From NCBI RefSeq assembly GCF_006345805.1, contig NW_021829880.1, forward strand, positions 1 to 45,727: a stretch of DNA of 45,727 nucleotides, given 5' to 3'. Shown here in pieces: positions 27,681 through 29,877 of the stretch. The stretch's first letter is position 1. Each line of letters begins with the position of its first letter. The notes beneath the pieces were generated by a model that saw only the letters and a program-made list of their open reading frames with translations, was not told the DNA's origin and ran no database searches. Position numbers and translations under genes: made by a program. Source of the DNA: Octopus sinensis (Eukaryota).

Positions 27681-28134
27681 GAAATCGAACCGGTTGAGTG
27701 TCTTAAATAATAAGGCACTAAAGAGGATGACAGTAATATATATTATATTATATATATATATATATAGATATATATATATGTGGTGGTGTGTGGTGTGTGT
27801 GTGTGTGTAAATACATACATAATATGTAATATTTATATATATATATTATATATATATATATATAATTAATTAATAAGGGTGAGAGAATTAGATACTAATT
27901 TAATGTATATCTATTCAACACCAAGTGCCTAGTGCTGTGCTCGAGAACCTGGATTATTATAATATTTTATAACATATTATATATTTTTACAAAATAATCT
28001 AAGAGAGTGGTCACTATATGGCTCACTCTAGCACCAGTTAATCCAAAAGGTTCAACCACGAAAATACATGTTTCCCATGAAAGTCAGTACGATGTTAGCT
28101 CACACGGACAGGGCAAATAAAAATAACAAAAATA

Positions 28135-28235
28135 CAGATTATTGTGGGACAATTGTTTCGCTATTAATGAATTAAATGTAATTTTACTTACAAAAAAAAA
28201 AAATCCATTTGTAGCTCGTCAGCCAAAACTTCTTG
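28135..28235 (-). ncRNA. Type I hammerhead ribozyme, unit 1
   Basis: Minus strand: UUUUGG-CUGACGA(28222-28216)-GCUA...UAGC-GAAA-C-AAUU-GUC/CCACAA. Predicted cleavage between 28148 and 28147. Stem I has one mismatch in this copy. Confidence 0.8.
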
Positions 28236-28663
28236 ATGAAATCCACTCAATCACACGCCAGATTTTACCATAATGATAAATACGCGTGTGGTTCAATTGA
28301 TTACACATCGACTTTATAATTCAAATGCCCCAACTACAGCGCGCCAAACTTTCACGGAAAAACAAATACAGCATTTAGAAATAAATGCAGCATAATTATA
28401 ATAATTAATACGGGTGAGAGAATTAGATACTAATTTAATAGTATATCTATTCAACACCAAGTGGCCTAGTGCTCCGAGAACCTGGATTATTAGAATATTT
28501 TATAACTATTATATATTTTTACAAAATAATATAAGAGAGTGGTCACTATATGGCTCACTCTAGCACCAGTTACCAAAAGGTTTCAACCACGAAAATACAG
28601 TGTTTCCCAAAAGTCAGTACGATTGTTAGCTCACACGACAGGGCAATAAAAATAACAAAAATA

Positions 28664-28762
28664 CAGATTATTTTGGACAATTGTTTCGCTATTAATGAAT
28701 TAAATGTAATTTTACTTACAAAAAAAAAAATCCATTTGTAGCTCGTCAGCCAAAACTATCTG
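28664..28762 (-). ncRNA. Type I hammerhead ribozyme, unit 2
   Basis: Minus strand: CAGAUAGUUUUGG-CUGACGA(28749-28743)-GCUA...UAGC-GAAACAAUUGUC/CAAAAUAAUCUG. One C fewer in the 3' strand of stem I than units 1 and 3. Confidence 0.8.
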
Positions 28763-29191
28763 GATGAAATCCACTCAATCACACCCAGATTTTACCATAA
28801 TGATAAATACGCGTGTGGTTCAATGATTACATCCGACGTTATAATTCAAATGCCCCACTAACACGCGCCAACTTTCACGGAAAACAAATACAGCATTTAG
28901 AAATAAATGCAGCATAATTATAATTAATTAATAAGGGTGAGAGAATTAGATACTAATTTATAGTATATATCTATTCAACACCAAGTGGCCTAGTGCTCCG
29001 AGAAACCGGGATTATATAATATTTATAACATATTATAATATTTTTACAAATAAATAAGAGGTGGTCACTATATGGCTCACTCTAGCACCAGTAATCCAAA
29101 GGTCCAATATATATAACGAAAATACATGTTTCCCATGAAGTCAGTACGATTGTGCTCACACGGACAGGGCAAATAAAAAATAACAAAAATA

Positions 29192-29284
29192 CAGATTATT
29201 TTGGGACAATTGTTTCGCTATTAATGAATTAATGTAATTTTACTTACAAAAAAAATCCATTTGTAGCTCGTCAGCCAACATCTG
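29192..29284 (-). ncRNA. Type I hammerhead ribozyme, unit 3
   Basis: Minus strand: CAGAUGUUGG-CUGACGA(29274-29268)-GCUA...UAGC-GAAACAAUUGUC/CCAAAAUAAUCUG. Predicted cleavage between 29205 and 29204. Confidence 0.8.
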
Positions 29285-29877
29285 GATGAAATCCACTCAA
29301 TCACACGCCAGATTTTACCATAATGATAAATACGCGTGTGGTTCAATTGATTACATCCGACGTTATAATTCAAATGCCCCAACTAACAGCGCGCCAAACT
29401 TTCACGGAAAACAAATACAGCATTTAGAAATATATATATATATATATAAATACATACATATATATGCATGTATGTATATATATATACACTTGTTTCTTAA
29501 ATTAATATAGGGTACGAAAAAATTATAGAAATGTTTTCTACCAGTGGCCTGGTATGTATACTAAGTCAATAGACATAGTTTTCATATAAAAATTCGTGTA
29601 TATTTATACACAAAGAGGCAAGCCATTACCAGGTTGCCTAACATACTAGAAAGAACAGTCAAAAAGTTCAAACCACAGTTAACAGTAATTTCGAAGGAAT
29701 GAGAACTTCGCCTTGCAAATTATTTTATTTGCTAATTAAATTTCGAAACCTAAGGTCCGGCCACTAGTATATATGCTGCCCTTATTGTAACAACATCTCA
29801 TTAATATGTAATCGATTTGTTCTATATATATATATATATATTATCATTTCGAAAGCATTATGATATTTGAATATACT

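What the first reader, a model, noticed from the sequence alone, without database searches (positions are those of the whole stretch)
27863..29432. Tandem ~530-bp units each carrying a type I hammerhead ribozyme: a candidate retrozyme / circular-RNA locus in a probable cephalopod genome
Seen: three head-to-tail copies embedded in (TA)n. On the minus strand each has the full catalytic core CUGACGA...GAAA, a GUC triplet, a GCUA/UAGC stem II and a palindromic ACAAUUGU helix III. The three-copy consensus gives a long stem I: 5'-CAGAU-AG-UUUUGG paired with CCAAAA-UA-AUCUG-3'. Established: type I HHRs with very short palindromic helix III occur in Penelope-like elements and metazoan non-LTR retrozymes, can cleave as dimers, and tandem copies release monomers that circularise. 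Inference: a minus-strand transcript would be cut at 29205/29204, 28676/28675 and 28148/28147, releasing ~528-nt non-coding monomers, longer than the few-hundred-nt metazoan monomers I know of. I cannot check whether this family is already described.
Basis: partly seen in the sequence, partly recalled or inferred. Interest (0 to 1): 0.92.

Follow-up and report, generated by a model that had tools for sequence, protein, structure and literature searches.

The report
Tandem hammerhead-ribozyme repeat in an octopus-like genome
Three head-to-tail copies of a ~528-bp non-coding repeat each carry a complete self-cutting hammerhead RNA motif, which makes this a new example, in an octopus-type genome, of the already known animal "retrozyme" / ribozyme-satellite elements rather than a new kind of system.

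Summary
Window 27863-29432 is a 2.97-unit head-to-tail array (units 527/522/519 bp) lying between two (TA)n tracts. On the minus strand each unit has a complete type I hammerhead: CUGACGA, GAAA, GUC, helix II GCUA/UAGC and helix III AC-AAUU-GU.

A strict descriptor expects 0.03 such motifs per window by chance. Rfam's hammerhead models miss the motif even at E<=10. I attribute this, untested, to helix II continuing into a ~47-nt AU-rich hairpin.

No single copy has the full consensus stem I. Copies differ mainly by 1-nt indels, which looks like long-read assembly noise.

A second, independent hammerhead with the same ACAAUUGU helix III sits at 36543-36589 (+). It is also inside a (TA)n-flanked element.

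No reverse transcriptase, endonuclease or other ORF is present. Dispersed repeats match an Octopus bimaculoides locus at 79-91%.

Best reading: a non-autonomous, Penelope-like-element-dependent "non-LTR retrozyme". The ~528-nt size is not exceptional: published consensus lengths run 51-972 bp, and the pDo500 satellite is ~500 bp.

Cleavage, circular RNA and genome-wide conservation could not be tested.

Verdict: new member of a known kind, moderate interest.

The parts
27863..29432 (-). Array of 2.97 head-to-tail units (527, 522 and 519 bp in array phase), non-coding, 32% GC
   Evidence: the longest ORF confined to the array is 63 aa (one 74-aa ORF runs out into the flanking (TA)n) and no Pfam family matched
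29192..29284 (-). Hammerhead copy A. Stem I 5' strand 29284-29275 (shortened: CAGAU-G-UUGG), C3 of CUGACGA at 29274, GUC 29207-29205, cleavage 29205/29204, stem I 3' strand 29204-29192 (intact).
28664..28762 (-). Hammerhead copy B. Stem I 5' strand 28762-28750 (full consensus CAGAUAGUUUUGG), C3 at 28749, cleavage 28676/28675, 3' strand lacks one C.
28135..28235 (-). Hammerhead copy C. Stem I 5' strand 28235-28223 (CAAGA-AGUUUUGG), C3 at 28222, cleavage 28148/28147, 3' strand CCACAAUAAUCUG.
28676..29204 (-). Predicted released monomer 1 (529 nt). Circular MFE -128.1 kcal/mol, z = -3.8, 65% of bases paired.
28148..28675 (-). Predicted released monomer 2 (528 nt). Circular MFE -115.2 kcal/mol, z = -1.95.
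29430..29486 (.). (TA)n tract abutting the RNA-sense 5' end of the array
27811..27864 (.). (TA)n tract abutting the RNA-sense 3' end of the array. The last unit stops ~17 nt short of a full unit, inside its own AT-rich segment TTAATTAATTA.
36543..36589 (+). Second, independent compact type I hammerhead: GUCCAC-CUGAAGA-UUGUC-GAUCAA-GACAA-GAAA-CAAUUGUA^GUGGGC. Same ACAAUUGU helix III; cleavage 36583/36584.
36416..36689 (+). 274-bp inverted repeat whose apex holds the second hammerhead (RNA MFE -133 kcal/mol, z = -22.9). The element lies between (TA)n tracts at about 36381-36419 and 36768-36801.

Best explanation
This is a short genomic array of a non-autonomous hammerhead-bearing retroelement. 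[quoted passage not shown] The host is an octopod-type genome.

Shown from the sequence:
- Three head-to-tail non-coding units lie between (TA)n tracts.
- Each unit encodes on the minus strand a type I hammerhead with the canonical metazoan layout. Helix I has 6 bp before an internal A.A/G.U irregularity, then 5 more bp. Helix II has 4 bp (G10.1-C11.1 closing pair) before a CA/AA internal loop. Helix III has 2 bp capped by the palindromic loop AAUU.
- All invariant core bases are present.

Inferred mechanism:
1. A minus-strand read-through transcript is made. It is probably not a pol III product, because U8-U12 runs lie inside the ribozyme.
2. The transcript folds each hammerhead. This happens either alone or, more stably, as a double hammerhead in which the ACAAUUGU segments of two neighbouring copies pair into an 8-bp helix III.
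3. Transesterification after C17 of GUC cuts at 29205/29204, 28676/28675 and 28148/28147. This releases 529- and 528-nt linear RNAs with 5'-OH and 2',3'-cyclic phosphate ends.
4. A host RtcB-type tRNA ligase circularises the monomers.
5. The reverse transcriptase/endonuclease of an autonomous PLE nicks a (TA)n microsatellite. It primes on the AU-rich stretch of the RNA (UUAAUUAAUUAUAAUUA) and copies the circle several times round. This would give a multimeric insertion whose two ends fall in the same AT-rich part of the unit, not at the ribozyme cut site, which is what is seen here.
For: - Array and units.
- Core, helices and cut sites read directly.
- Chance expectation 0.03 per window against 2 strict hits, 3 with stem I >=3 bp, plus copy B read by eye.
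- Unconstrained MFE folds recover stem I and the extended helix II in all three copies and in the consensus.
- Helix III is unstable alone (0.0) and gives a -7.8 kcal/mol 8-bp duplex between copies.
- The layout (helix I 6 bp, helix II 4 bp, helix III 1-2 bp with a palindromic 2-4 nt loop) is the published 'canonical metazoan type I' hammerhead (PMC4209133).
- Non-coding, no LTR, 32% GC and tandem arrangement match the published definition (PMC7229834).
- Monomer RNA is more stable than shuffles (z = -3.8 and -1.95).
- Both array ends lie in the unit's AT-rich segment next to (TA)n.
- (TA)n is a documented preferred target of some PLE endonucleases, and PLEs typically insert as partial tandems (PMC8557442).
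- Retrozymes are reported to be related to PLE pseudo-LTRs (10.64898/2026.07.22.740005).
- A second hammerhead with the same helix III sits in another (TA)n-flanked element 7 kb away.
- U8-U12 runs lie on the ribozyme strand.
Against: - Rfam hammerhead models do not report the motif at gathering score or at E<=10.
- As assembled, no copy has a perfect stem I.
- The hammerhead region as a whole is not clearly better conserved than the rest of the unit: 12 of 105 variable columns against about 16% overall. The ~28 functionally fixed positions show 1 variable column where ~4.5 are expected (Poisson P about 0.06), so three young copies give no real test of selection.
- No PLE reverse transcriptase or GIY-YIG ORF was found in the 45.7-kb window.
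- No other copy of the family could be retrieved from any accessible collection. Copy number, dispersal and covariation are therefore unknown.
- No expression or cleavage data exist.
- Target-site duplications cannot be read because both flanks are microsatellite.
Confidence: 0.7

Rival explanations
1. Dead relic. The array does derive from a hammerhead retroelement, but the copies at this locus are inactive because each stem I carries real deletions or substitutions. No RNA is processed here.
For: Each copy departs from the consensus stem I in its own way. Only three units are present, and no autonomous element is nearby.
Against: Differences between copies are 25-29 gap events against 6-11 mismatches per pair. 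That ratio is typical of unpolished long-read assembly rather than of mutation. Substitution divergence is only about 1-2%, so the copies are young. The core, the base of helix II and helix III are intact in all three. MFE folds still form stem I in every copy.
Confidence: 0.2
2. DNA-level tandem duplication. A single hammerhead-bearing fragment, for example a solo PLE pseudo-LTR, was inserted once and then triplicated by replication slippage or unequal crossing-over in the microsatellite-rich surroundings. No circular-RNA or rolling-circle reverse-transcription step is involved.
For: The window is crowded with microsatellites and local duplications. The array ends do not coincide with the ribozyme cut sites. 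PLE insertions themselves generate partial tandems (PMC8557442).
Against: The units are precisely head-to-tail. The array spans almost exactly three units, with both ends in the same AT-rich stretch, as expected for copying round a circle or a multimeric RNA. Tandem organisation with one ribozyme per unit is the defining state of the described family (PMC7229834).
Confidence: 0.15
3. Chance resemblance. An AT-rich minisatellite happens to contain hammerhead-like strings.
For: Rfam covariance models give no hit. The three copies are one evolutionary event, not three.
Against: Expectation is 0.03 per window. All invariant positions plus G10.1-C11.1 are present, as are the canonical 6/4/2-bp helix layout and the palindromic loop 3. 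An unrelated second motif in the same window has an identical GAAACAAUUGU segment.
Confidence: 0.03
4. Assembly artefact. The genome holds one unit, and the assembler expanded it into three.
For: The indel-rich differences indicate noisy reads.
Against: The copies carry distinct multi-base differences, such as TTATATATATTGGACC in unit 1 against GGTTGAAACC in units 2 and 3, and an extra GCAC in unit 3. These are not typical read noise.
Confidence: 0.04

Closest known systems
Metazoan non-LTR retrozymes (Cervera & de la Pena 2020, PMC7229834; Li, Clavereau & Pollet 2026, bioRxiv 10.64898/2026.07.22.740005)
   Same: Head-to-tail non-coding repeats, one type I hammerhead per unit, GC below 45%, no LTR, and a short helix III with a palindromic loop. 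The class is already known in a mollusc (mussel, ~350-390-bp units).
   Different: The unit is longer than the 170-400 nt given in 2020, but inside the 51-972 bp range given in 2026. Helix II continues into a ~47-nt AU-rich hairpin instead of ending in a small loop 2, so Rfam models miss it. Only three units are present at this locus. RNA circles and cleavage were not tested. No description in cephalopods was found in the library searched.
Hammerhead satellite DNAs: newt satellite 2, Schistosoma Sm-alpha, Dolichopoda pDo500 (PMC2837043)
   Same: Tandem repeats transcribed into multimers that self-cleave to monomers. pDo500 has roughly 500-bp repeats, close to the size here. Single- and double-hammerhead modes have been proposed for these satellites.
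   Different: Those satellites form very large arrays (pDo500 is about 5% of one cave-cricket genome). Here there is a 3-unit array in a microsatellite, and genome-wide abundance is unknown.
[quoted passage not shown] 2021, PMC8557442)
   Same: Type I topology, palindromic helix III suited to dimer action, insertion as partial tandems, and microsatellite ((TA)n) target bias reported for some PLE clades.
   Different: The PLE min-HHRs have helix II of 7-8 bp, helix I of 4-5 bp and little or no helix III, and they flank an RT-endonuclease ORF. The array hammerhead has the canonical 6/4/2 layout, and no RT or endonuclease ORF is in the window. The second hammerhead at 36543-36589 is closer to the compact PLE style.
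Plant LTR retrozymes (Cervera et al. 2016, PMC4918200)
   Same: Non-autonomous, hammerhead-processed, and circular RNA proposed as the transposition intermediate.
   Different: The plant elements have type III hammerheads inside ~350-bp LTRs, a PBS and PPT, GC above 55% and 4-bp target duplications. None of these is seen here.

Membership tests
Hammerhead ribozyme, type I | Invariant core C3 U4 G5 A6 N7 G8 A9 ... G12 A13 A14, an A15.1-U16.1 pair, and H17 at the cleavage site | tested here: met
   CUGACGA, GAAA and A-C-[AAUU]-G-U-C are present in all three copies. The descriptor reports copies A and C; copy B was confirmed by reading.
Hammerhead ribozyme, type I | Three helices around the core, with helices II and III closed by loops and helix I open | tested here: met
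   Helix II is GCUA/UAGC extended by AAUGGAUU/AAUUCAUU and UGUAA/UUACA. Helix III is AC/GU plus AAUU. Helix I is UUUUGG/CCAAAA plus CAGAU/AUCUG. Stem I and helix II are recovered by unconstrained MFE folding.
Hammerhead ribozyme, type I | Match to the Rfam hammerhead covariance models at gathering score | tested here: not met
   No hammerhead family at gathering score or at E<=10. The compact second motif is also missed. Likely causes, not tested, are the ~47-nt insertion in helix II and the 2-bp helix III.
Hammerhead ribozyme, type I | Mg2+-dependent self-cleavage 3' of H17 | not testable with these tools
   Needs in-vitro transcription of monomer and dimer constructs.
Hammerhead ribozyme, type I | Conservation or covariation of stems among independent copies | tested here: inconclusive
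   Only three young copies are available. The fixed positions show 1 variable column against ~4.5 expected (P about 0.06). No further copies could be retrieved.
Metazoan non-LTR retrozyme | Head-to-tail tandem repeats, each with one type I hammerhead | tested here: met
Metazoan non-LTR retrozyme | Non-coding, with no LTR, and low GC (<45-50%) | tested here: met
   The longest ORF confined to the array is 63 aa; a 74-aa ORF runs out into the flanking (TA)n. No Pfam hit was found. The whole unit repeats, so there are no terminal repeats. GC is 32%. PBS and PPT motifs were not searched for specifically.
Metazoan non-LTR retrozyme | Monomer size within the described range | tested here: met
   528-529 nt is outside the 170-400 nt of PMC7229834 but inside the 51-972 bp of 10.64898/2026.07.22.740005.
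Metazoan non-LTR retrozyme | Expressed as linear and circular monomer RNA | not testable with these tools
   No transcriptome data were accessible.
Metazoan non-LTR retrozyme | Multiple dispersed genomic loci, and co-occurrence with autonomous PLEs in the genome | not testable with these tools
   No cephalopod nucleotide collection was available. There is no RT or endonuclease ORF in the window. The literature states that cephalopods carry PLE (Naiad) remnants (PMC8557442).
PLE pseudo-LTR minimal hammerhead | Helix II of 7-8 bp, helix I of 4-5 bp, helix III absent or 1 bp, located in repeats flanking an RT-GIY-YIG ORF | tested here: not met
   The array hammerhead has a 4-bp helix II before an internal loop, a 6+5-bp helix I and a 2-bp helix III. 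No such ORF is present.
Plant LTR retrozyme | Type III hammerhead within LTRs, with PBS and PPT | tested here: not met
   Topology is type I and no LTR structure is present. PBS and PPT were not searched for specifically.
Viroid-like / HDV-like infectious circular RNA | Ribozymes in both polarities (or an ORF), and not integrated in host DNA | tested here: not met
   There is no ribozyme of any Rfam family on the plus strand and no descriptor hit there. The array is embedded in host-type repeats shared with Octopus bimaculoides.

The most novel reading that the evidence does not exclude
Octopods carry an undescribed, currently active retrozyme family with several distinguishing traits. Its hammerhead has a long helix II extension, so it is invisible to Rfam-based annotation. 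It yields ~528-nt circular RNAs. It is inserted specifically into (TA)n by priming on its own AU-rich segment. That last point would tie retrozyme integration directly to the target preference of a PLE endonuclease. A second element type would sit alongside it, in which a hammerhead lies at the apex of a ~100-bp-arm foldback.
Probability: 0.25. Interest if true: 0.6.

Novelty: new member of a known kind. Interest (0 to 1): 0.4.

Why it matters
If the family is active, it would extend ribozyme-processed circular RNAs to cephalopods, whose transcriptomes are studied intensively for RNA-level regulation. It would also add a natural hammerhead that tolerates a long insertion in helix II.

Two points have practical value.

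First, standard Rfam/Infernal annotation misses this motif and the second one in the window. Hammerhead and retrozyme censuses in such genomes are therefore likely to be underestimates.

Second, both hammerhead elements sit in (TA)n, and the array ends fall in the unit's own AT-rich stretch. This gives a concrete, testable hint about how these non-autonomous elements are primed and integrated by Penelope-like machinery.

It does not open a new category.

Tried and rejected
1. Rfam at gathering score over the whole window, and at E<=10 over the array and over the second motif, gave no hammerhead. It returned only AT-repeat microRNA-like noise.
2. Tandem Repeats Finder did not list the array because its period limit is 500.
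3. Exact gapped-pattern scans for this hammerhead found nothing in JGI metagenomes or IMG/VR.
4. A looser pattern (CTGANGAGC..GCGAAACAATTGTC) in metagenomes gave 5 loci. None has a stem I: four are one conserved sequence family of 43-48% GC with no stem I, and one is a 66% GC, probably bacterial, contig. I judged them chance matches.
5. I tried to fish out other copies through spurious ORF calls. The exact look-up of the 74-aa ORF was not on record. A word-index protein search with a 59-aa consensus frame found no candidate. An exhaustive phmmer search with the 68-aa frame opposite the ribozyme gave one weak hit that I judged irrelevant (E 3.5e-4, 35% identity).
6. A literature search for the ribozyme strings returned only unrelated papers.
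7. Searches for hammerhead or retrozyme together with cephalopod terms found only Craig et al. 2021, which does not describe this element.
8. The search for a PLE RT/endonuclease or any gene ran Pfam on 10 ORFs and on most of the non-low-complexity stop-free segments of >=62 aa. It gave nothing but one sub-threshold DUF1722 hit.
9. Pol III / SINE idea: ARAGORN found no tRNA-like gene and there is no acceptable A or B box. U8-U12 runs on the ribozyme strand argue against pol III.
10. A lone GAAACAATTGT at 21750 (+) has no CUGANGA upstream and was dropped.
11. Target-site duplication cannot be read because both flanks are compound TA/TGTA microsatellite.
12. An exact look-up of the window's Tc1-like ORF, meant to identify the source record, was not on record.
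Full report
**1. What is in the sequence**

Reading the minus strand of 27600-29700 shows a head-to-tail repeat. Direct-repeat families have start-to-start spacings of 522-535 bp. Self-BLAST aligns 27861-28908 with 28397-29435 at 91.6% over 1075 bp. 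In the phase of the array, the units (each beginning TTTCTAAATGCTG) are 527, 522 and 519 bp. The last unit stops about 17 nt short of a full unit. Tandem Repeats Finder does not list the array because its period limit is 500, but it does list the (TA)n tracts that abut it at 27811-27864 and 29430-29486.

**2. The ribozyme motif**

Every unit contains, on the minus strand...GG-CUGACGA-GCUA-[~47 nt]-UAGC-GAAA-CAAUUGUC-CC....

In standard numbering:
- Core: C3 U4 G5 A6 C7 G8 A9, then G12 A13 A14.
- Helix II closing pair: G10.1-C11.1.
- Helix III: A15.1-U16.1 and C15.2-G16.2, capped by AAUU.
- Cleavage site: C17.

The released monomers would be 529 and 528 nt.

The ~47 nt inside helix II are not a loop. 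After a CA/AA internal loop they pair as AAUGGAUU/AAUUCAUU and UGUAA/UUACA. Unconstrained MFE folding recovers this extension, and stem I, in all three copies and in the consensus.

The consensus stem I is CAGAUAGUUUUGG / CCAAAAUAAUCUG. That is 6 bp next to the core, then an A.A mismatch and a G.U pair, then 5 bp.

This layout is what Cervera and de la Pena describe as the canonical metazoan type I hammerhead: helix I 6 bp, helix II 4 bp before an irregularity, helix III 1-2 bp with a small palindromic loop (PMC4209133).

**3. Is it more than chance?**

I wrote a descriptor requiring CUGANGA, helix II >=4 bp, GAAA, helix III >=2 bp, U-H and helix I >=4 bp of uninterrupted pairs, with a helix II loop of up to ~90 nt. 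In 300 dinucleotide-preserving shuffles of the window it finds a mean of 0.03 matches on both strands, and 2% of shuffles give any match. In the real window it finds 2. With stem I >=3 bp it finds 3. Copy B is missed only because of its stem I deletion.

One of the strict matches is unrelated to the array. It lies at 36543-36589 on the plus strand: GUCCAC-CUGAAGA-UUGUC-GAUCAA-GACAA-GAAA-CAAUUGUA^GUGGGC. It shares the exact segment GAAACAAUUGU with the array ribozyme. Its stems are entirely different but still paired.

The three array copies count as one event. Two independent families in 45.7 kb is far from chance.

**4.

Rfam 15 gives no hammerhead match at gathering score for the window. It gives none at E<=10 for the array or for the compact second motif. 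I record this as a membership feature tested and not met.

The likely reasons are the long insertion in helix II and the 2-bp helix III. I could not test this, because only window or locus sequence can be submitted to the Rfam tool.

**5. State of the individual copies**

No copy, as assembled, has the full consensus stem I:
- Copy A reads CAGAU-G-UUGG.
- Copy B lacks one C after GUC.
- Copy C has CAAGA-AG... and CCACAA.

Pairwise, the units differ by 25-29 gap events but only 6-11 mismatches. An indel-to-substitution ratio near 3:1, mostly 1-nt deletions, is what unpolished long-read assemblies produce. It is not what mutation produces. Real divergence is therefore probably only about 1-2%, and some or all stem I defects may be artefacts. 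This is an inference.

With three young copies there is no power to detect selection. Twelve of 105 hammerhead columns vary, against about 16% overall. The ~28 positions that must be fixed show one variable column where about 4.5 are expected, P about 0.06.

Distinct multi-base differences between units argue against the array being an assembler duplication.

**6. Monomer or dimer action**

The helix III segment does not fold by itself (0.0 kcal/mol). Two copies pair through ACAAUUGU into an 8-bp duplex of -7.8 kcal/mol. This is the classical double-hammerhead arrangement of newt and viroid RNAs (Forster et al. 1988, cited in PMC4209133 and PMC7229834).

A 2-bp stem with a tetraloop is described as 'similar to invertebrate HHRs', and most invertebrate retrozyme hammerheads are reported to self-cleave efficiently as single motifs (PMC7229834). 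Both modes therefore remain possible.

**7. The rest of the unit**

- No ORF confined to the array exceeds 63 aa, and no Pfam family matches.
- ARAGORN finds no tRNA-like gene, and there are no usable A or B boxes.
- The ribozyme strand has U8-U12 and several U5-U6 runs, which would stop pol III.
- GC is 32%.
- As circles, the monomers fold to -128.1 and -115.2 kcal/mol, with 65% of bases paired. The z-scores are -3.8 and -1.95 against shuffles. They are structured, but not rod-like.
- No ribozyme of any Rfam family, and no descriptor match, lies on the plus strand of the array.

**8. Surroundings and origin**

The window is eukaryotic and packed with microsatellites and dispersed repeats.

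A Tc1-like DDE_3 transposase remnant (about 14877-15588, minus strand) has its highest identity, 72%, to an Octopus bimaculoides protein. Three hits at 63-66% identity, including one from the ant Harpegnathos saltator, had better E-values.

The 20-kb O. bimaculoides locus fetched around that gene shares several non-coding dispersed repeats with the window at 79-91% identity. An octopod origin, whether O. bimaculoides or a relative, is therefore well supported. The exact record could not be identified.

No reverse transcriptase or GIY-YIG endonuclease remnant was found among most non-low-complexity stop-free segments of >=62 aa across the window.

**9. The second hammerhead element**

The second motif sits at the apex of a 274-bp inverted repeat, 36416-36689. 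This folds into a nearly perfect hairpin with ~100-bp arms (-133 kcal/mol, z = -22.9).

The whole element lies between two (TA)n tracts. The left arm stops 7 nt short of the complement of the ribozyme cut site.

One reading is an inverted 5'-truncated copy next to a full copy, an arrangement described as typical of PLE insertions (PMC8557442). I did not pursue this further.

**10. Mechanism proposed**

Shown: array structure, motif, cut-site positions, (TA)n flanks, and both array ends lying in the unit's own AT-rich stretch rather than at the cut site.

Inferred from the literature on the family (PMC7229834, PMC7761336):
1. The minus strand is transcribed.
2. The hammerhead self-cleaves to unit length, giving 5'-OH and 2',3'-cyclic phosphate ends.
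3. A host RtcB-type tRNA ligase circularises the monomers.
4. A PLE-encoded enzyme reverse-transcribes the circle.

My own inference concerns priming. The nicked (TA)n target primes on the AU-rich segment UUAAUUAAUUAUAAUUA, and synthesis runs almost exactly three times round. This would explain why the array is 3 units minus ~17 nt, with both ends in that segment. It fits the reported (TA)n bias of some PLE endonucleases and the tendency of PLEs to insert as partial tandems (PMC8557442).

**11. Comparison with what is known**

The locus meets every sequence-level criterion of a metazoan non-LTR retrozyme.

Its size is not exceptional. A 2026 survey reports consensus lengths of 51-972 bp, with a mean of 650 bp in ray-finned fishes, and concludes that retrozymes derive from PLE pseudo-LTRs. 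The cave-cricket hammerhead satellite pDo500 has roughly 500-bp repeats. Mussel retrozymes, the closest host taxon studied, have ~350-390-bp units.

Particular to this locus are the long helix II extension, the 13-position stem I, the (TA)n setting and the host group. In the library I could search, no paper describes hammerheads or retrozymes in cephalopods. That is absence from the library, not proof of absence from the literature.

**12. What could not be done**

No cephalopod nucleotide collection or transcriptome was accessible. Attempts to reach other copies through pattern scans and through spurious ORF calls all failed. Copy number, dispersal, covariation, expression, circularity and cleavage therefore remain open.

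**13. Verdict**

- Observation: confirmed.
- Interpretation: partly supported. The class is right, the novelty of the size is overstated, and the proposed Rfam check is negative.
- Novelty: new member of a known kind.
- Interest: 0.4.

Noticed in passing
window 36416-36689 (+), hammerhead at 36543-36589: A second, sequence-unrelated compact type I hammerhead (cleavage GUA^G at 36583/36584) sits at the apex of a near-perfect inverted repeat with ~100-bp arms (RNA MFE -133 kcal/mol, z = -22.9). The element lies between two (TA)n tracts. The left arm ends 7 nt short of the complement of the cut site. Rfam misses this motif too.
   Followed up: partly
window 27863-29432: The units differ by 25-29 gap events but only 6-11 substitutions per pair, mostly 1-nt deletions. 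This is the signature of an unpolished long-read assembly, so fine details of any feature in this window, including reading frames, should be treated with caution.
   Followed up: partly
window 14877-15588 (-): Remnant of a Tc1-like (DDE_3) transposase. It is 72% identical in protein to Octopus bimaculoides LOC106873612 and 79% in DNA over 633 bp to that locus. A similar fragment appears to lie near 25588-25863 (+).
   Followed up: partly
window 36773-37141, 40676-41037, 17359-17504: Copies of a repeat whose reverse complement looks like a tRNA-derived SINE head (GGCCCAGTGGTTAGGG...GGTTTCGATTCCC). ARAGORN calls no tRNA gene. The copies are 82-90% identical to one another.
   Followed up: no
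window 7940-8136, 8163-8352, 8389-8545, 16991-17156, 37215-37357, 41899-42104: Another short dispersed repeat family, present three times in tandem near 7.9-8.5 kb. It is also found in the Octopus bimaculoides locus L001 at 76-91% identity.
   Followed up: no
window 21750-21760 (+): A lone GAAACAATTGT, the same 11-mer as in both hammerheads, without a CUGANGA box upstream. It is either chance or a fragment of a decayed copy.
   Followed up: partly
window 1002-3355: A very long (ATA)n tract of about 794 repeats. Many other long microsatellites occur as well, for example (GTG)n 12276-12856, (TGA)n 38377-38962 and (TCTA)n 13912-14277. Microsatellite density is unusually high across the whole window.
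   Followed up: no
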